From sequence record NC_047838.1: 64,000 nt of DNA, one strand, 5' to 3'. Below, in pieces: positions 5,050-11,636 of this stretch. A program made the position numbers and the translations under genes. The notes under the pieces were generated by a model. That model searched no databases and had not been told where the DNA came from. It saw only the letters and a list, made by a program, of their open reading frames with translations. Within the stretch, counting starts at the first letter, position 1, and the number at the start of each line of letters is the position of its first letter.

Positions 5050-5907
5050 ATGCCTTCGGAAATAAAACCCAAGGTCCGTAAAGTAGCGGACATAAAAGCA
5101 AAGTTACTTAACCCTGCTCTCACTTCACACTTTGAGGTGCAGATTCCTCTGCCTAACGGTGCTGTGCGAGCAGAGTTAGAGTCTATTAGACCTGATGGTG
5201 GAGAGCAGCAGGACGCTCTTAATATCAGATGCACGAACGCAAGTCTTCCTGGATCTAATCTTGCCACCCTTGAATTAAACAACACCTATCATGGCGTCAC
5301 TCAACGTCATGCATATCGTAGAGTTTATGATGATAGAATTGATCTTGAGTTTTTAGTAGATGCAGATGACTATCTTCCTATCAGATTTTTTGAGAAGTGG
5401 ATAGACTCAATCATGCTTCAGACACAAGAAGGTGAAGGAAATGAGAGTCCTGTCAGTCAATCATATACTTACAGAGCAAGTTATTCTGACGACTATGTTT
5501 GTCCTTCAGGATTGAAGATAGTTAAATTTGAAAGAACCGGAAAGAATGGTGATTATACAGGTAGCGCACTTGAATATACATTTGTGAATGCCTATCCTTT
5601 TACTATTTCGTCGATGCCTATTTCATATGATTCATCATCTCTTCTGAAATGCACGGTGTCATTTTCATATCTTCGTTATGTTATTAATGATGTAATCAAA
5701 AAACCAAGCACCACACCTGGCACGATTGGTGATCCACAGAGTCCTAAATCTGGATCCAAGCAAACGCCTGCTTTGAATAAGGACTCTAGAAATACGGTTC
5801 ATTCTTCAATTGATTCAATTGCAACCTCTGGCGAGGTAGGAGATACAGTTACTCCACAATTAAGACAAGAACTTCTTGCGTTTGCTCGTGGAGAAACAGG
5901 ATCTTAA
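5050..5907 (+). CDS. Tail-tube initiator/tube-like protein (gp54/gp19-like)
   Basis: SLPG..LAT, YRRVYDDRIDLEF, YTFVNAYP..ISSMPISY, VSFSY tube-fold motifs. Confidence 0.7.
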   Translation: MPSEIKPKVRKVADIKAKLLNPALTSHFEVQIPLPNGAVRAELESIRPDGGEQQDALNIRCTNASLPGSNLATLELNNTYHGVTQRHAYRRVYDDRIDLEFLVDADDYLPIRFFEKWIDSIMLQTQEGEGNESPVSQSYTYRASYSDDYVCPSGLKIVKFERTGKNGDYTGSALEYTFVNAYPFTISSMPISYDSSSLLKCTVSFSYLRYVINDVIKKPSTTPGTIGDPQSPKSGSKQTPALNKDSRNTVHSSIDSIATSGEVGDTVTPQLRQELLAFARGETGS

Positions 5908-5949: not shown

Positions 5950-6669
5950 ATGCCTTTACCAAAGATTGCTGCGCCAACTTACACCCTTGAGTTGCCATCC
6001 ACAGGAGAAGAGATTTCATATAGACCTTTTCTTGTTAAAGAAGAAAAGGTTTTGGTCATCGCTTTAGAAAGTGAGGACACGAAACAGATTACAAATGCTA
6101 TCAAGACTGTAATCAAGAACTGTATCTTGACAAAGGGTATTAAAGTAGAGGCACTCCCTACATTTGATATTGAATATCTGTTCCTCAACATTCGTGGCAA
6201 GTCTGTCGGTGAAGAGATTGAAGTGAATGTATATTGTCCTGATGATGGTGAGACTCAGGTTCCTGTGACGATTGACCTTGACGATATTAATGTTATCAAA
6301 AATGAAGAGCACACTAATAAGATTAAACTTGATGAGAACTTAATGATGGAAATGAGATATCCATCACTTGATGAATTTATCAAAAATAATTTTGATTTTA
6401 CTAGTGAAAATGCGATGGATCAATCATTCAATCTGATTGCATCCTGTATTAATAATATCTTTAGTGATGAAGAAGTCTGGGCAGCAGAGGACTGCACCAA
6501 GAAAGAGATCAAAGAGTTTCTTGAGCAGATGAATTCTGCACAGTTCAAAGATATTGAGAAGTTCTTTGAGACGATGCCTAAGTTGTCCCATAAAATCAAG
6601 GTCACTAATCCAAAGACTAAAGTTGAGAGTGAAGTTGTTCTTGAGGGACTGGCAAGTTTTTTCGCGTAG
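5950..6669 (+). CDS. g26: Baseplate hub assembly protein gp26
   Basis: MPLPKI..PTYTLELPS..YRPFLVKEEK, FDIEYLFLNIRGKSVGE, LEGLASFF. Confidence 0.88.
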   Translation: MPLPKIAAPTYTLELPSTGEEISYRPFLVKEEKVLVIALESEDTKQITNAIKTVIKNCILTKGIKVEALPTFDIEYLFLNIRGKSVGEEIEVNVYCPDDGETQVPVTIDLDDINVIKNEEHTNKIKLDENLMMEMRYPSLDEFIKNNFDFTSENAMDQSFNLIASCINNIFSDEEVWAAEDCTKKEIKEFLEQMNSAQFKDIEKFFETMPKLSHKIKVTNPKTKVESEVVLEGLASFFA

Positions 6670-6694
6670 CCCTCTCTCACATGAGTCTAGAGGG
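6657..6694 (+). promoter_or_regulatory. Putative -1 programmed ribosomal frameshift signal (T TTT TTC, 6-nt spacer, hairpin)
   Basis: Heptamer 6657-6663 in g26 frame; stem CCCTCT/AGAGGG plus CTC/GAG at 6670-6694; -1 frame open into the g51 ORF. Confidence 0.75.
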
Positions 6695-6851
6695 ATATTA
6701 CCGTCTTAACTTTTCGTTGATGCAATACCATAAATATTCATTAACGGAACTTGAGAATCTCATCCCCTGGGAGAGAGACATCTATGTTGCTTTATTACAA
6801 CAACATCTTGAAGATGAAAAGTTAAAACATCAGCAGCAGAATGGCATCTAG
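6681..6851 (+). CDS. g51: gp51-like baseplate hub assembly ORF (56 aa; probably the C-terminal part of a frameshift fusion)
   Basis: Manual translation MSLEGYYRLNFSLMQYHKYSLTELENLIPWERDIYVALLQQHLEDEKLKHQQQNGI*; missing from ORF track; no SD before ATG. Confidence 0.85.
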   Translation: MSLEGYYRLNFSLMQYHKYSLTELENLIPWERDIYVALLQQHLEDEKLKHQQQNGI

Positions 6852-9240
6852 GACTACTACTGATCCAATAGAAATACTCTTAGAGATGGGTGTAGACCTA
6901 GATAATCTCTCTGAAGAGGAGGATTATCTTAGTGCCTTGATGGAGGCGGTTAATTCACTGACAATTAAAGATGCAAGTGATCCTCGCATCGGATTCTTAG
7001 CAGACGAAATAAGAAAGGTAAGACAAAAAAGAAAAGAAGCAGACCCCAAGTTCAAAGCAAAGAAAACAAAGATATCTGCAAATTCCTTAAAGTCTACACC
7101 TAGACTTGCTGCTAAGACCACAAAAATAAGTCCTCAAAAACTTTTACCTGGAAGCACAGAGGTAGGAAAGGAAGAACCTGAGCAGGATTCTATTATAAAA
7201 ATTTTAACTGACATCTCTGAGTCAGTTAAGTCTATCTTATATTCTTTGAAGGCAAGTAATAATATCTCAAAGAACCTTGCTGAGGATGAGAGAAAGAGAC
7301 AAGAGAGTAAGAAAAGATCTGGTGCTGAGAGTAAGTTAGAGAAGAAAAGATTTGAAGGTCTAAAAAAACTTGGCGGTAAACTTATAGAACCAATCAAGGG
7401 ACCTTTAGAAATGCTTTTTAATTTTCTAAAGAATGTCATTCTTGGAAAGATCGTTCTTGGAATTATTGATTGGTTAGGTGATCCAGAAAATCAGAAAAAA
7501 CTTGAGAGTCTTGGTAGATTCTTCATGGACTGGTGGCCAACGATTGTCACTGCTGTATTACTGTTTGGTACAGGACTAGGTGGATTACTAAAATCAATCG
7601 TAGGTATCACTTTTAAATTCATACCAAAACTTCTTGGATTACTTCCTGGTCTATTGAAATTCTTGAAGTCCCCGATGGGGCGTATTGCTGGACTAGCAGT
7701 TGCTGGTGCTGGTTTAGCAGGTAGAATGATGGATGGTGGTGAGGATGATGTTGATCTAACAAAGCAAGATCCTGCACCTCAAAAGATGATGGACGGTGGT
7801 CTTGTTCCTGGTGAAGGTCCAAATAAGGATACCGTGCCTGCCATGTTGGCACCTGGTGAATTTGTTATGAGTAGGGGTGCTGTGCAGAAGTATGGAGCAG
7901 ACACCATGGCATCGATGAATGCTGCTGGTGGCGGAACTAATCTTCCACAGAGGATGAATGGTATAACTTATGCTGCTGGTGGTGGAATGATTGGTGATGA
8001 CGGAAAAGAGAAGGCATCTCCTAAGTTGGCCAGAGAGATGGAAAAGAGAGATAAAACACTAGGAGTAAATGAAGAAGTAAAATCAGATACTGCGAGTAAA
8101 AGACATGCTGAGTTAATGAAGACCACTAATCCGCAAAGGATTGCTGATTATGATGCCAAACATGGGCAAGGAGCATACTCTAAGAAACTACGTGAGAAAC
8201 TTGAAAAAACATATTCCACTCCATCTCCATCTGCACCAGCAGCGACGGCAATAAAATCAACTGGTAAAGTAGTTGGTAGAGAGAATTTACCTCCTGCGAC
8301 TAGAGCACTTCTTGAAAAGATGGATGCTCAAAGAGCAAGCGGAACTGCCGATATGATGTATTCTAAAAAAGGTGGTGGTTTTAGACAAAGAATATCTGCT
8401 GAAGACTTTAATCGAGTCAAAGGAATGGTGGGTGCGGCAAAAGAGGGTGGTGCTAAAGGTGTGTTAAATCACATGCTCTCAGGTGCAAAGAGTATGTTTG
8501 GTGGGATGATTGGTAAAGTTCAGGGTGCTGTTAATGACCCTAAATCTTTTGTTGAATCCATGGGTGGAACTGTTAGGGATGGAAATGTAGGAAGAATGAC
8601 ACCGCAACTACAGAAAGAATTTGATAAACTTAATGCGGCTAGAGCAAGAGCAGATAAACTAGAAGCAGAAAATAAGGCGATGTCAACTCAAGGGGGTCTT
8701 CGGAAACAACTTGAGAAGGATCCTTTATTTGCGGAGTATGAAAGAGCTTTTGATGATCCAAAACATCCTTTACATGATAAAGTAGCTGGTGATCTTTTTG
8801 ATGATACTGGAACTAAACATCCTCTAAGGTTTGAAGAATTTAAAAAGTTAAAAGCACAACAGAAAAATGGTGGTGGTGAAGTAAAAGAATCATCTGGTCA
8901 AAATTTTGCTGGTGGAACTGCAGATAGACAGTTGATTAAGGCACAACCTGGTGAGTACATGCTTCCCGTTGATACTGTTAATAATCTTGGTGGTCCTGCA
9001 AGACTTGATCAATTGGTTGCTAATACAGATAGCAATTCAACTCCTGCTAAGTTAGGAATGAGGTCAAGAAAGACACCACAGGTAGGACCTCCTATGCCCA
9101 TGCAACCACAAATTAATTTGATTCCCACTCCTACAGGAGGCAGTAAAGGATACGGCGATTCATCTGGATCTGCGCTTCCTAATTTTGATGCTGGCATCGG
9201 TGATCCTAACAAAGCAAAACTTCTTGGAGTGGTTAGATAA
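6841..9240 (+). CDS. Tape-measure-like / hub protein 1
   Basis: Helical K/E-rich N-terminus, hydrophobic helices, GGLVPGEGPNKDTVPAMLAPGEFVM motif typical of tape-measure C-termini; follows g26/g51. Confidence 0.6.
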   Translation: MASRTTTDPIEILLEMGVDLDNLSEEEDYLSALMEAVNSLTIKDASDPRIGFLADEIRKVRQKRKEADPKFKAKKTKISANSLKSTPRLAAKTTKISPQKLLPGSTEVGKEEPEQDSIIKILTDISESVKSILYSLKASNNISKNLAEDERKRQESKKRSGAESKLEKKRFEGLKKLGGKLIEPIKGPLEMLFNFLKNVILGKIVLGIIDWLGDPENQKKLESLGRFFMDWWPTIVTAVLLFGTGLGGLLKSIVGITFKFIPKLLGLLPGLLKFLKSPMGRIAGLAVAGAGLAGRMMDGGEDDVDLTKQDPAPQKMMDGGLVPGEGPNKDTVPAMLAPGEFVMSRGAVQKYGADTMASMNAAGGGTNLPQRMNGITYAAGGGMIGDDGKEKASPKLAREMEKRDKTLGVNEEVKSDTASKRHAELMKTTNPQRIADYDAKHGQGAYSKKLREKLEKTYSTPSPSAPAATAIKSTGKVVGRENLPPATRALLEKMDAQRASGTADMMYSKKGGGFRQRISAEDFNRVKGMVGAAKEGGAKGVLNHMLSGAKSMFGGMIGKVQGAVNDPKSFVESMGGTVRDGNVGRMTPQLQKEFDKLNAARARADKLEAENKAMSTQGGLRKQLEKDPLFAEYERAFDDPKHPLHDKVAGDLFDDTGTKHPLRFEEFKKLKAQQKNGGGEVKESSGQNFAGGTADRQLIKAQPGEYMLPVDTVNNLGGPARLDQLVANTDSNSTPAKLGMRSRKTPQVGPPMPMQPQINLIPTPTGGSKGYGDSSGSALPNFDAGIGDPNKAKLLGVVR

Positions 9241-11636
9241 TGTTAGGTCTCGCACTCAGAGGAGCATCTGCATTATCAAAGGCAGGTAAGGGAGCACAGA
9301 TGGCAAAAGCCATCACAGGTCGGAAGAAAAAACCAGTACCAGGCATGGCACGACCAGGTGGTGGCGAAGGTGGCGGTGGAGGAGGTTCTGCGATCATTAA
9401 AGCAAAGGTGGTCTCTGCTCCCGCATCTGCTCTTGTTCCTGTAAAAAAATCTCCTAATGTTCAGCAGGGAATGGGTTCAGGAATCATTAGTATTCTTGAA
9501 ACTATTAGAGCAAATGTAAAAGAGATTGATGATTTTTATAAAGGCACAGTTGCTGCCAAAAGAGAAGAGATAAAGAAGAGAAAGAAACAAGAGAGTGATC
9601 AGAGAAAAGCAGAGCAGGAAACAAAATTAGAAAAACCAAAGGTTGATAAAAAACCCGACATGAACTTGAAGGGTTTGAAGATGCCAAAGACTGGCATTCT
9701 TGACGGAATCTTTAGGTTCATTAGTAATGTATTGATGGGCATGTTGGTCATGAAGTTGATTGACTTTGCTGATGCCCTTGAGAAAAGTGGTATTCTCCCT
9801 CTACTTGGAAAGATAGGTGACTTTATTTTAGATATTGGTGGCAAGATACTTAACGGGTTAATAACTTTTATTGATAAAGGGTATGAAATTTATGATGGAC
9901 TAAGAAAATCTATTGGAGATAACTTTGGTGAGGGAGCACAAGAGCAGTTTGATAGTCTTGCTAGCACTCTCAACAAAGTATTAAATACTGTCTTCTCAGT
10001 TGGTCTTGCAATCTCTCTTCTTGCTGGTGCGATACCCCAGAAGAAACCAAAGCAACCAAAGAAACCAAAAAAACCAAAGAAACCAAAACCCAAACCTAAG
10101 ACAAAAGTAAAACCAAAACCAAAACCTAAAGGTTTCTTTGGTAGACTTGGAGCGGGTTTTCAAGCAGCAGGTGAAGGTCTTGCAAAAGCAGGACAAAGTG
10201 CTGTTGATTTAGGTGTTAGTGGTCTCAAGGCAATCGGTGGTGGTCTTAATAAAATTTCTGGTGGTAACTTAGGTAAACTAGGAAACTTCCTTGGAGAGCA
10301 ATATCAAAATGTTTCTAAGGGTGCAAGAGCAGCATTTGACAGAGTTGCTGGTCTTGGTAATTCTTTGAAATCAAAGTTTGGATCTGCCATGGATAGCGTC
10401 AAGGGTGCTATTGGAAACATGGCAGAGTCTGCCAAGAAGGCAGTCATGCAAAAAATTATTGAACCAATAAAACCTTTTCTTGATCCAATTATAGATAAGG
10501 CAAAAAAGATTGGTGATAAAGTTATTGGAATATTGAAAAAGATACCTGGATTTGATAATATACTTCAGGTGCTCAAGAAAAAAGGTGTTAATGGTTTAGG
10601 TGACGCTGCAGGCATTCTTAAAAAAGCAGGATCAAAAGCACTTCCTATAGTTGGTGGTATTTTTAATTTACTTTTTGCATATGATAGACTTGCGGGAGGA
10701 GATACTTTTGGTGCATTATTAGAATTACTCTCTGCTGGTCTTGATATCTCAGGACTTTTTGGATTTGCTCCTGGTCCTGGTATATCCATGGGTATTGATG
10801 CATACATGTTTGCGAGAGATTTTGTTCCTCTGATTCAGGAGGGTGAAGAGAAAGCAATTAATGCTATAGGACTTGGTGGTTTTAAATCTGAGATTGACAA
10901 AATCGCATCAAAACTTCCTGACCTTGGATCTATTGTAAAGATGTTTGGTGGAGAACAAGTTGAGCAAAAATCTGCTGCAGAGATTGCATCAACAACCGGA
11001 GACACCTCTGCTGCTGATGGCACTACACCTGCACCTGCTGCATCAGATTCACCTGCTGCATCAGATACACCTGCATCAACACCTAGTGTGAATATAGACA
11101 CTGTTGATGGAGGATCTAGAGAGCAAAGTGAAGGCACAAAAATTGCTGGTGATCTTGGTAGATTCTTATATAAAGAATTAAGTTCTCCTAGAGATTTCCA
11201 AGCAGTTACTGAGCATCCAGATTTTGGTGGATCATTTAGAAGATCATATGATTCTTATCATAATTACGATCGTGCTATTGATATTGGAGTATATCCTCAT
11301 GAGCAACCAAAAATTCTACAGGCAATAGCGAAATTTAACCAGATAAATGGAGTTAGTCCTGTTGAATTACTTCATGCTGGAAATGATCCAGGTGGTGGTC
11401 ATGATGATCACGTTCACATAGCATATGAGGGTGGTGGATATGTAGGTGGTAAGTATAATATGAAGTCAATTGAAAGACGTGCATCATATGAGGGTGGTGA
11501 GCAAATGATTGACATTCCTATTCCCATGCCTCAGCAACCAACTACCACCCCTCAACCAGAACTCGTCCCATCTGGATCTGGATCGTTCTCTGCAGACTTC
11601 AAAGATGACTTTGAATTCCTTGAGTTCCAGGGTTAA
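9240..11636 (+). CDS. Tape-measure-like / hub protein 2 with C-terminal peptidase M15-like motif
   Basis: Paralogous segment to 6841 protein; SYHNYDRAIDI...HDDHVHIAY near C-terminus. Confidence 0.55.
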   Translation: MLGLALRGASALSKAGKGAQMAKAITGRKKKPVPGMARPGGGEGGGGGGSAIIKAKVVSAPASALVPVKKSPNVQQGMGSGIISILETIRANVKEIDDFYKGTVAAKREEIKKRKKQESDQRKAEQETKLEKPKVDKKPDMNLKGLKMPKTGILDGIFRFISNVLMGMLVMKLIDFADALEKSGILPLLGKIGDFILDIGGKILNGLITFIDKGYEIYDGLRKSIGDNFGEGAQEQFDSLASTLNKVLNTVFSVGLAISLLAGAIPQKKPKQPKKPKKPKKPKPKPKTKVKPKPKPKGFFGRLGAGFQAAGEGLAKAGQSAVDLGVSGLKAIGGGLNKISGGNLGKLGNFLGEQYQNVSKGARAAFDRVAGLGNSLKSKFGSAMDSVKGAIGNMAESAKKAVMQKIIEPIKPFLDPIIDKAKKIGDKVIGILKKIPGFDNILQVLKKKGVNGLGDAAGILKKAGSKALPIVGGIFNLLFAYDRLAGGDTFGALLELLSAGLDISGLFGFAPGPGISMGIDAYMFARDFVPLIQEGEEKAINAIGLGGFKSEIDKIASKLPDLGSIVKMFGGEQVEQKSAAEIASTTGDTSAADGTTPAPAASDSPAASDTPASTPSVNIDTVDGGSREQSEGTKIAGDLGRFLYKELSSPRDFQAVTEHPDFGGSFRRSYDSYHNYDRAIDIGVYPHEQPKILQAIAKFNQINGVSPVELLHAGNDPGGGHDDHVHIAYEGGGYVGGKYNMKSIERRASYEGGEQMIDIPIPMPQQPTTTPQPELVPSGSGSFSADFKDDFEFLEFQG
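10035..10130 (+). repeat. Degenerate 9-nt/6-nt tandem repeat encoding (PKK)n/(PK)n
   Basis: ccaaagcaa ccaaagaaa ccaaaaaaa ccaaagaaa ccaaaa ccc aaa cct aag ... Confidence 0.8.

What the first reader, a model, noticed from the sequence alone, without database searches (positions are those of the whole stretch)
6657..6851. -1 ribosomal frameshift joining g26 to the g51 ORF: a lambda G/GT-type tail chaperone pair in a T4-like phage
Seen: g26 ends ...GCA AGT TTT TTC GCG TAG. The heptamer T TTT TTC (6657-6663) is a canonical X XXY YYZ slippery site. Six nt later lies a hairpin (CCCTCT 6670-6675 with AGAGGG 6689-6694, CTC with GAG, loop ACAT). The -1 frame reads F-R-V-A-L-S-H directly into the 56-aa g51 ORF, giving a predicted 300-aa fusion beside the 239-aa gp26. 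The g51 ATG has no SD (CCCTCTCTCAC precedes it) and is partly sequestered in the hairpin. The locus directly precedes tape-measure-like genes. Established: many long-tailed phages make two tail-assembly chaperones by frameshifting just upstream of the tape measure gene (lambda G/GT). Inference, from my recollection of T4 gp51: it is a gp26-like body plus a tail resembling this ORF (Y.L.....IP.ER). T4 would then encode G and GT as two genes, while this phage makes both from one locus.
Basis: partly seen in the sequence, partly recalled or inferred. Interest (0 to 1): 0.88.

Follow-up and report, generated by a model that had tools for sequence, protein, structure and literature searches.

The report
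Frameshifted tail chaperone pair, already described
The cyanophage Bellamy almost certainly makes a short and a long tail-assembly chaperone from its g26-g51 locus by slipping back one base at a run of six T's; this is real and very widely conserved, but it was already published for T4-like phages in 2022.

Summary
The window is Synechococcus phage Bellamy, bases 1-64000.
- the in-phase heptamer T TTT TTC at 6657-6663
- one sense codon, then the g26 stop
- the 56-codon g51 ORF in the -1 frame
- a hairpin at 6670-6694

Comparison with relatives strongly supports recoding. Of 192 non-redundant g26 junctions, 189 carry an in-phase T TTT TTY heptamer 0-24 nt before the stop. These junctions cover 26 of 28 clusters at 50% identity, from cyanophages to Vibrio, Aeromonas, Sinorhizobium, Stenotrophomonas, Acidovorax and Desulfovibrio phages. 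All 189 then have an open 55-73 codon -1 extension homologous to g51. 70 have no ATG near the start of that extension, and 46 have no start codon of any kind there.

T-even-type phages instead carry two genes.

The hairpin is conserved only in Bellamy's own clade. A Shine-Dalgarno-like GAGG 10 nt upstream is more widespread.

The idea is not new: Vladimirov, Gautam & Davidson (Virology 2022) identified these genes as the tail assembly chaperones of T4-like phages. I could not read that paper. Still open is whether the shift is ribosomal (which I favour) or happens during transcription.

The parts
5050..5907 (+). Tail-tube-like gene directly upstream (context for the tube - chaperone - tape measure order)
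   Evidence: Pfam PF23849 Phage_TTP_2 at 5e-20 and phrog_45 'tail tube' at 3.9e-36. The gene in this position is annotated as tail tube in phiM12 and Vibrio 6E35-1b.
5950..6669 (+). g26, the short chaperone form (TAC-N), 239 aa
   Evidence: Pfam PF12322 T4_baseplate at 1.5e-77; phrog_150 positions 5-232 of 282.
6643..6647 (+). Shine-Dalgarno-like GAGGG; its GAGG core ends 10 nt before the heptamer (possible frameshift stimulator; also encodes the conserved Glu-Gly)
   Evidence: A core SD 4-mer lies 8-11 nt (mode 10) upstream in 140/189 junctions, against 7.9% of background windows. The Glu codon here is GAG in 65%, against 32% gene-wide.
6657..6663 (+). Slippery heptamer T TTT TTC, in phase with g26
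   Evidence: Present in 189/192 non-redundant junctions and in 26 of 28 clusters at 50% identity. Codon choice is strongly non-random.
6667..6669 (+). g26 stop codon, one sense codon after the heptamer
   Evidence: The same spacing occurs in 170 of 189 non-redundant junctions that have a heptamer.
6663..6851 (+). -1 frame reading after the slip: 62 codons plus stop, the C-terminal extension of the long form (TAC-NC, 300 aa in all)
   Evidence: The -1 frame is open here. The extension is 55-73 codons in all 189 relatives, and all match a g51-tail HMM. The 11-nt spacer holds a His codon kept in 152/166 junctions (invariant, 110/110, in Bellamy's own group) and shows 3-nt periodicity in the -1 frame.
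6670..6694 (+). Hairpin 6 nt after the heptamer; its loop and 3' stem hold the annotated g51 ATG
   Evidence: -11.5 kcal/mol, z = -1.77. In Bellamy-like relatives the inner 5-bp stem is paired in 80% of cells, against 18-48% when slid, and 0 of 1000 column shuffles reach that value. It is not conserved in the S-SM1-like or Melnitz-like clades.
6681..6851 (+). Annotated g51 ORF (56 aa), here read as the distal part of the -1 extension and not as a separate gene
   Evidence: phrog_634 positions 63-116 of 121 at 1.6e-25, and phrog_150 positions 244-281 of 282 at 4.5e-4. BLASTP 4e-5 to residues 211-245 of a T-even gp51.
6841..9240 (+). First tape-measure-like gene (799 aa); overlaps the end of the g51 frame by 11 nt
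   Evidence: Weak matches to tape measure PHROGs, 6e-7 to 3e-4. Annotated as hypothetical.
9240..11636 (+). Second tape-measure-like gene (798 aa)
   Evidence: phrog_1535 and phrog_1272 'tape measure' at 1e-6 and 2e-4; phrog_790 'endolysin' at 7e-55.

Best explanation
g26 and the g51 ORF are one recoded gene for the tail assembly chaperones of this T4-like cyanophage. Most ribosomes read g26 to its stop and make the 239-aa short form. A minority slip back one base on T TTT TTC (6657-6663), with two Phe-tRNAs re-pairing in tandem. They then read 62 more codons in the -1 frame and make a 300-aa long form, whose tail is the 'g51' peptide.

By analogy with lambda G/GT, the shared body would coat the tape measure protein encoded just downstream, and the tail would recruit tail tube subunits. 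Neither product would be in the virion. A Shine-Dalgarno-like GAGG 10 nt upstream may raise the slip rate, and so may the hairpin 6 nt downstream in Bellamy's own clade.

Shown: the signals, their conservation, the homology of the tail to the C-terminus of T-even gp51, and the synteny.
Inferred: that slippage is ribosomal, its rate, and the chaperone function.
For: - The heptamer, its phase and the -1 relation hold in 80/80 close relatives, in 11/12 diverse GenBank phages, and in 189/192 non-redundant junctions, which cover 26/28 clusters at 50% identity.
- All 189 have a 55-73 codon -1 extension that matches the g51-tail HMM. The +1 frame extension has a median of 7 codons.
- 70/189 have no ATG, and 46/189 have no ATG, GTG or TTG, within 14 codons after the slip. 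Aeh1, ACP17 and Desulfovibrio phage 7757 are among these.
- A His codon conserved in 152/166 junctions and 3-nt periodicity in the -1 frame lie inside the 'intergenic' spacer upstream of the annotated ATG.
- Codon choice at the site is TTT-TTC 176 and TTT-TTT 13, never TTC-first, and the preceding codon always ends in T. Other Phe-Phe pairs in the gene avoid TTT-TTC (6 of 204).
- T-even phages, which have separate short and long genes, have lost the T-run.
- T-even gp51 is the PF12322 body plus a g51-like tail.
- The SD-like motif is enriched about 9-fold at a 10-nt spacing.
- The 45 nt after the heptamer fold better than controls: median z -1.53 against -0.69 and -0.07.
- Literature: T4 gp26 and gp51 are listed as hub assembly chaperones that are absent from the particle (PMC3004832). 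PolyT -1 signals in the TAC-N genes of T4-like phages are cited as known (PMC12846349).
Against: - No expression data were available.
- Six T's could also act through RNA polymerase slippage, which would give the same protein.
- The title of Vladimirov et al. [quoted passage not shown] I could not read the paper, so I do not know whether that means the two-gene solution or slippage in transcription.
- The SD-like motif coincides with a conserved Glu-Gly, so protein constraint explains part of it.
- The hairpin is weak in Bellamy (z = -1.77) and absent in other clades.
- Bellamy itself does have an ATG 11 nt after the stop, so some independent or re-initiated synthesis of a 56-aa peptide is not excluded.
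- There is no sequence homology to lambda-type chaperone families, and the fold model was too poor to test this.
Confidence: 0.68

Rival explanations
1. Transcriptional slippage. RNA polymerase occasionally adds one U while copying the six-T run, so a fraction of mRNAs carries g26 and g51 in one frame. The long protein would have the same sequence as under ribosomal slippage.
For: - What is conserved is a homopolymer run: T6 in 176 junctions and T7 in 13 of 189.
- Selection for a T at the wobble position of the preceding codon lengthens the run, which fits this model as well.
- The title of Vladimirov et al. 2022 (seen) may point this way.
Against: - The run is short. From general knowledge, productive slippage by bacterial RNA polymerase is usually described for longer runs.
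- 93% of junctions keep exactly six T's followed by C and do not extend the run, although the C is also needed for the conserved Arg codon of the -1 frame.
- Neither the SD-like motif at the spacing typical of ribosomal stimulators nor the excess downstream structure has a role in this model.
- Two citing papers read the 2022 work as describing -1 frameshift signals plus a two-gene alternative (PMC12846349, PMC10885494).
Confidence: 0.2
2. Two separate proteins. g51 is translated on its own from the ATG at 6681, for instance by re-initiation after termination at 6669, and acts as a free 56-aa peptide. No fusion is made.
For: - Bellamy and most of its clade have an ATG at this place (97 of 110), 11 nt after the stop.
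- GenBank annotates g51 as a separate gene.
- In the Vibrio D494-like clade the canonical heptamer is missing and the ATG overlaps the stop codon, so a free tail peptide may work in some phages.
Against: - The ATG is missing in 70/189 junctions, and no start codon of any kind is present in 46/189.
- Codons upstream of the ATG are conserved in the -1 frame, including a His codon kept in 152/166 junctions.
- Conservation of the heptamer at synonymous sites has no role in this model.
- There is no SD, and the ATG is held in the hairpin.
- In T-even phages the tail exists only fused to a body.
Confidence: 0.07
3. Chance or non-functional. The T-run merely encodes a conserved Phe-Phe, and the -1 ORF is an ordinary small neighbouring gene.
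For: Phe-Phe is nearly invariant at the protein level (F237 and F238 in the alignment).
Against: - Synonymous choice at the site is the opposite of that at other Phe-Phe pairs.
- The wobble T of the preceding codon is invariant across seven amino acids.
- The frame relation is -1 in every case.
- The T-run is lost exactly where a fused gene exists.
Confidence: 0.02

Closest known systems
[quoted passage not shown]
   Same: The same gene family (gp26/gp51) and the same reading: a short TAC-N and a long TAC-NC. PolyT -1 signals occur in most T4-like phages, and some phages carry a separate short gene and a fused long gene. This is how PMC12846349 and PMC10885494 summarise the paper.
   Different: Nothing of substance. 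Bellamy is an unannotated instance. I could not read the paper, so I cannot say whether it covers the SD-like element, the clade-specific hairpin or the codon statistics, or which mechanism it favours.
Phage lambda G/GT and the conserved tail-gene frameshift of long-tailed phages (Levin, Hendrix & Casjens 1993; Xu, Hendrix & Duda 2004, both as cited in PMC12859696)
   Same: The position between the tail tube and tape measure genes, a -1 shift a few codons before the stop of the first ORF, and two products with a shared N-terminal body.
   Different: No detectable sequence homology. The body is much larger (239 aa), the slippery sequence is a T-run read by Phe-tRNAs, and the genes were historically named baseplate hub components.
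T4 gp26 and gp51, hub assembly chaperones (PMC3004832, table 2)
   Same: Homologous: PF12322 and phrog_150/phrog_634. gp51 is needed for assembly but is absent from the particle.
   Different: In T-even phages these are two divergently transcribed genes with no T-run. In Bellamy there is one locus with recoding.
Tail assembly chaperone locus of Pakpunavirus and Andersonviridae phages (PMC12846349)
   Same: A conserved -1 shift at a GTTTTT-containing motif at the 3' end of TAC-N, an uninterrupted -1 frame, and a downstream ORF routinely annotated as a separate hypothetical gene.
   Different: A different protein family and different phage lineages.
dnaX-type -1 frameshift sites of bacteria (internal SD upstream, hairpin downstream; from general knowledge)
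   Same: The layout: an SD-like element about 10 nt upstream, a heptamer, and a hairpin about 6 nt downstream.
   Different: A different heptamer. The stimulators here are unproven: the SD-like element overlaps conserved codons and the hairpin is clade-specific.

Membership tests
Frameshifted tail assembly chaperone pair (lambda G/GT type) | Lies between the tail tube gene and the tape measure gene | tested here: met
   The upstream gene matches PF23849 and phrog_45 (tail tube). The two downstream proteins of about 800 aa give weak tape-measure PHROG matches. The order is the same in phiM12, whose downstream gene is annotated as similar to tape measure proteins.
Frameshifted tail assembly chaperone pair (lambda G/GT type) | The second ORF overlaps or abuts the first in the -1 frame and has no conserved start of its own | tested here: met
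   The -1 relation holds in 81/81 and 189/189. There is no ATG in 70/189 and no start codon of any kind in 46/189.
Frameshifted tail assembly chaperone pair (lambda G/GT type) | [quoted passage not shown] | tested here: met
   T TTT TTC at 6657-6663, 3 nt before the stop. It is conserved in 189/192 junctions.
Frameshifted tail assembly chaperone pair (lambda G/GT type) | Sequence or fold homology to known chaperone families | tested here: inconclusive
   No Pfam chaperone family matched at E up to 10 for 16 diverse members, and no PDB sequence match better than E = 0.045. The AlphaFold model was unusable, with mean pLDDT 35.8, so no fold search was run.
Frameshifted tail assembly chaperone pair (lambda G/GT type) | Both products are made, the long one in minority, and both are needed for tail assembly | not testable with these tools
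   This needs expression data from infected cells.
T4 gp26/gp51 family (Pfam PF12322, phrog_150, phrog_634) | Significant match to the family profiles | tested here: met
   g26 matches PF12322 at 1.5e-77. The g51 ORF matches phrog_634 at 1.6e-25 and the C-terminal end of phrog_150 at 4.5e-4.
T4 gp26/gp51 family (Pfam PF12322, phrog_150, phrog_634) | The long member equals the short body plus a g51-type tail | tested here: met
   KaAlpha gp51 has the PF12322 body at residues 2-200 and matches phrog_634 at residues 146-246. BLASTP to the Bellamy g51 ORF gives 4e-5 at residues 211-245.
Ribosomal -1 frameshift site with dnaX-type stimulators | An SD-like element about 10 nt upstream of the heptamer | tested here: inconclusive
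   Present in Bellamy (6643-6646) and in 140/189 relatives, against 7.9% of background windows. GAG is enriched at the Glu codon, but the motif is also the conserved Glu-Gly codon pair.
Ribosomal -1 frameshift site with dnaX-type stimulators | A conserved structure 5-9 nt downstream | tested here: inconclusive
   Conserved with covariation in the Bellamy-like clade only. It is not conserved in the S-SM1-like or Melnitz-like clades.
Programmed transcriptional slippage site | A long homopolymer run, with RNA heterogeneous in run length | not testable with these tools
   The run is six T's in 93% and seven in 7% of junctions. RNA data are needed.

The most novel reading that the evidence does not exclude
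The recoding site may be a true ribosomal -1 frameshift signal with three parts: an internal SD-like GAGG at 10 nt, a T TTT TTC heptamer read by Phe-tRNAs, and lineage-specific downstream hairpins. It would have been kept since the common ancestor of nearly all T4-like phages. It would have been replaced twice by other solutions: gene duplication into gp26 + gp51 in T-even phages, and a stop-start overlapped free tail ORF in one Vibrio phage clade. If so, it would be one of the oldest and most widespread phage recoding signals. It would also be a natural system for studying SD-stimulated frameshifting in marine cyanobacteria, which make little use of SD sequences for initiation. If the 2022 paper argued for a non-ribosomal route in these phages, this would contradict it.
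Probability: 0.35. Interest if true: 0.5.

Novelty: already known. Interest (0 to 1): 0.3.

Why it matters
Two practical points follow.
- It corrects a widespread annotation. 'Baseplate hub subunit' and 'baseplate hub assembly catalyst' in hundreds of cyanophage and other T4-like genomes are in fact one recoded chaperone gene. In several genomes the second part is not annotated at all (Aeh1, ACP17, Acinetobacter SH-Ab 15599).
- It gives a clean comparative data set: 189 junctions, with natural 'controls' that lost the signal. This could help settle whether T-run recoding in these phages is ribosomal or transcriptional.

The biological idea itself, that gp26/gp51 is the G/GT equivalent of T4-like phages, has been published since 2022. 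The finding confirms known biology and does not open a new question.

Tried and rejected
- Structure: an AlphaFold2 run on g26 with 19 close homologues gave mean pLDDT 35.8. The model was too poor for a fold search, so none was run.
- Sequence homology to solved structures and to Pfam chaperone families: nothing beyond chance.
- RNAalifold on whole clades (110, 34 and 11 sequences) returned no consensus structure. A fixed-register pair count was needed to see the clade-specific stem.
- The search for related loci with the Vibrio 6E35-1b protein found nothing. The Aeh1 and Ps15 queries gave only 7 and 2 loci.
- Literature: seven searches did not find the prior work. It surfaced only through a citing paper. 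The paper itself is not held.
- Stop-codon readthrough: rejected, because the two ORFs are in different frames.
- A +1 shift: rejected, because +1 extensions are short (median 7 codons).

Full report
**Identity of the window.** The window is the first 64 kb of Synechococcus phage Bellamy (MF351863 / NC_047838, Kyanoviridae), at 100% identity. GenBank annotates 5950-6669 as 'baseplate hub', 6681-6851 as 'baseplate hub assembly catalyst', and the next two genes as hypothetical.

- g26 (5950-6669, 239 aa) ends AGT TTT TTC GCG TAG.
- The heptamer T TTT TTC is at 6657-6663, in X XXY YYZ phase.
- The g51 ORF (6681-6851, 56 aa) is in the -1 frame.
- The -1 frame is open from four codons before the heptamer to 6851.
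- A slip would give 238 + 62 = 300 residues. I did not build that sequence.
- The hairpin at 6670-6694 folds at -11.5 kcal/mol with z = -1.77, and 15 of 200 shuffles fold as well. Taken alone it is unremarkable.

**Protein families.**
- g26 is a full PF12322 (T4_baseplate) domain, E = 1.5e-77.
- It covers positions 5-232 of the 282-position phrog_150.
- The 56-aa ORF matches phrog_634 'baseplate hub assembly catalyst' at 1.6e-25.
- The 56-aa ORF also matches positions 244-281 of the same phrog_150, E = 4.5e-4.
- So that family contains long members whose C-terminus corresponds to g51.
- Upstream lies a tail-tube-like gene (PF23849, phrog_45).
- Downstream lie two proteins of about 800 aa with weak tape-measure matches.

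**Close relatives.** I took 80 IMG/VR loci whose g26 is 72-96% identical to Bellamy's. In all 80:
- the heptamer is unchanged;
- it is followed by one sense codon and a stop;
- the g51 frame is -1;
- the gap between the ORFs is 11 nt.

The neighbouring synonymous sites vary freely. Three of these loci lack the ATG.

**Distant relatives.** I examined twelve GenBank phages whose g26 is 22-64% identical to Bellamy's:
- cyanophages S-SRM01, P-SSM3, S-SM1 and MED4-213
- Methylophilales phage Melnitz
- Sinorhizobium phiM12
- Desulfovibrio phage 7757
- Stenotrophomonas Ps15
- Aeromonas Aeh1
- Vibrio 6E35-1b and Vibrio D494
- Acidovorax ACP17

Eleven of the twelve have T TTT TTC or T TTT TTT in phase 0-6 nt before the stop. 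They also have a 53-65 codon -1 extension with a conserved g51-like motif. The +1 frame closes after 3-27 codons.

**All loci pooled** (264 loci held, 257 analysable, 192 non-redundant junctions):
- 189 have the in-phase heptamer.
- In 170 of those the stop follows after one codon.
- All 189 have a -1 ORF of 55-73 codons after the slip point.
- All 189 match an HMM of the g51 tail at E < 1e-3.
- 70 have no ATG within 14 codons after the slip point.
- 46 have no ATG, GTG or TTG there.
- By single-linkage clustering, the signal is present in 26 of 28 clusters at 50% identity and in 13 of 15 at 40%.

**Evidence at the nucleotide level.**
- At the site the Phe-Phe pair is TTT-TTC in 176 junctions and TTT-TTT in 13.
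- The other Phe-Phe pairs in the same genes are TTC-TTT 131, TTT-TTT 54, TTC-TTC 13 and TTT-TTC 6.
- The preceding codon always ends in T, although it encodes Ser, Asp, Ala, Asn, Gly, His or Thr. For Ala, only 28% of codons end in T gene-wide.
- The 11-nt 'intergenic' spacer holds a His codon in the -1 frame. It is invariant in the 110 Bellamy-like sequences and present in 152 of 166 with canonical spacing.
- Mean column entropy in the spacer is 0.53 bit at -1-frame second positions and 1.31 bit at third positions.
- The spacer is therefore translated in the -1 frame, upstream of the annotated ATG.

**The T-even comparison.**
- In Klebsiella phage KaAlpha (Tevenvirinae), gp26 (209 aa) and gp51 (249 aa) are divergent genes. 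gp51 is followed by gp27, gp28 and gp29.
- gp26 is the PF12322 body alone.
- gp51 is the body (residues 2-200) plus a tail that matches phrog_634 and the end of phrog_150.
- The Bellamy 56-aa ORF aligns to gp51 residues 211-245, E = 4e-5.
- Neither T-even gene keeps a T-run at the junction. The Phe-Phe of gp26 uses non-slippery codons.
- The fused long form occurs in 1381 phage records, mostly Escherichia, Klebsiella, Shigella and Acinetobacter phages, including T2 and RB6.

**Possible stimulators.**
- A core SD 4-mer, mostly GAGG, lies 8-11 nt (mode 10) upstream of the heptamer in 140/189 junctions. Only 7.9% of windows elsewhere in the gene have one.
- The Glu codon within it is GAG in 65% of junctions, against 32% gene-wide.
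- It also encodes a conserved Glu-Gly, so this evidence is suggestive only.
- The 45 nt after the heptamer fold better than controls: median z -1.53 against -0.69 and -0.07.
- That effect comes mainly from the Bellamy-like clade (median z -1.91) and the S-SM1-like clade (-1.30), and is absent in the Melnitz-like clade.
- In the Bellamy-like clade a 5-bp stem around the ATG is paired in 80% of cells. Slid controls give 18-48%, the column-shuffle mean is 72%, and 0 of 1000 shuffles reach 80%. Several pair types occur at each position.
- In the other clades that stem is not conserved.

**Exceptions.**
- The T-even gp26 is described above.
- In the Vibrio D494-like clade the T-run is only four or five bases, and the ATG of the -1 ORF overlaps the g26 stop. 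A free tail peptide may be made there.
[quoted passage not shown] This is probably a homopolymer length call.

**Prior knowledge.**
- T4 gp26 and gp51 are listed as hub assembly chaperones, and gp51 is absent from the particle (PMC3004832).
[quoted passage not shown] The paper is not in the library.
- PMC12846349 cites it for polyT -1 frameshift signals in the TAC-N genes of T4-like phages.
- PMC10885494 cites it for T4-like phages that carry one short gene and one fused long gene instead of frameshifting.
Bellamy is an unannotated instance.

**Mechanism.**
- I put about 0.9 on recoding at the T-run.
- I put 0.68 on the favoured full account, which includes ribosomal tandem slippage. The support is the phase, the SD-like element at the typical spacing, the downstream structure in two clades, and a run that stays at six T's.
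- Transcriptional slippage gets about 0.2.
- The two routes give the same protein, so only RNA data can separate them.

**Limits.**
- No expression data were available.
- No usable structure model was obtained.
- There is no sequence link to lambda-type chaperones.
- The loci are phylogenetically related, so raw counts overstate independence. The cluster counts are the fairer figure.

Noticed in passing
L094 (Klebsiella phage KaAlpha) 3187-4618: In this T-even-type phage the short and long chaperones are two divergent genes. Both have lost the T-run, and the Phe-Phe of gp26 uses non-slippery codons. This is a natural control showing that the T-run is kept only where recoding is needed.
   Followed up: yes
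L093, L265, L266 (Vibrio phages D494, 207E48.1, K475), g26 3' ends: This clade has no canonical heptamer. Its T-run is only 4-5 bases, and the ATG of the -1 ORF overlaps the g26 stop codon. This may be a third way of expressing the tail part, either by coupled translation of a free peptide or by a weaker single-tRNA slip.
   Followed up: partly
L264 (Stenotrophomonas phage IME-SM1) g26: One frameshift relative to the 99%-identical phage Ps15 makes the g26 frame run on for 29 codons in the wrong frame. It is most likely a homopolymer length error in the assembly.
   Followed up: no
g26 ORFs of 189 loci (window 5950-6669 and relatives): Away from the recoding site, Phe-Phe dipeptides are encoded mostly TTC-TTT (131 of 204) and rarely TTT-TTC (6). 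This looks like avoidance of accidental slippery runs inside the gene.
   Followed up: partly
L090 (Aeh1), L092 (ACP17), L095 (Acinetobacter SH-Ab 15599), L088 (Desulfovibrio phage 7757): The g51-like -1 extension is present but not annotated at all in these records, because it has no start codon. L088 carries no annotation of any kind. In several other records it is called a hypothetical protein.
   Followed up: yes
window 6841-9240 and 9240-11636: Two tandem genes of about 800 aa, both with weak tape-measure matches and a weak match to each other's PHROG. The second also matches phrog_790 'endolysin' at 7e-55 over residues 269-584. This may be a split or duplicated tape measure/hub protein (a gp29 equivalent) with a cell-wall-degrading region.
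   Followed up: no
window 6841-6851: The end of the g51 frame overlaps the start of the first tape-measure-like gene by 11 nt. This suggests coupled translation of chaperone and client.
   Followed up: no
window 6676-6685 and the Bellamy-like loci: The conserved inner stem is built around the palindrome that contains the annotated ATG. The hairpin could therefore serve to hide that ATG from independent initiation as much as to stimulate slippage.
   Followed up: partly
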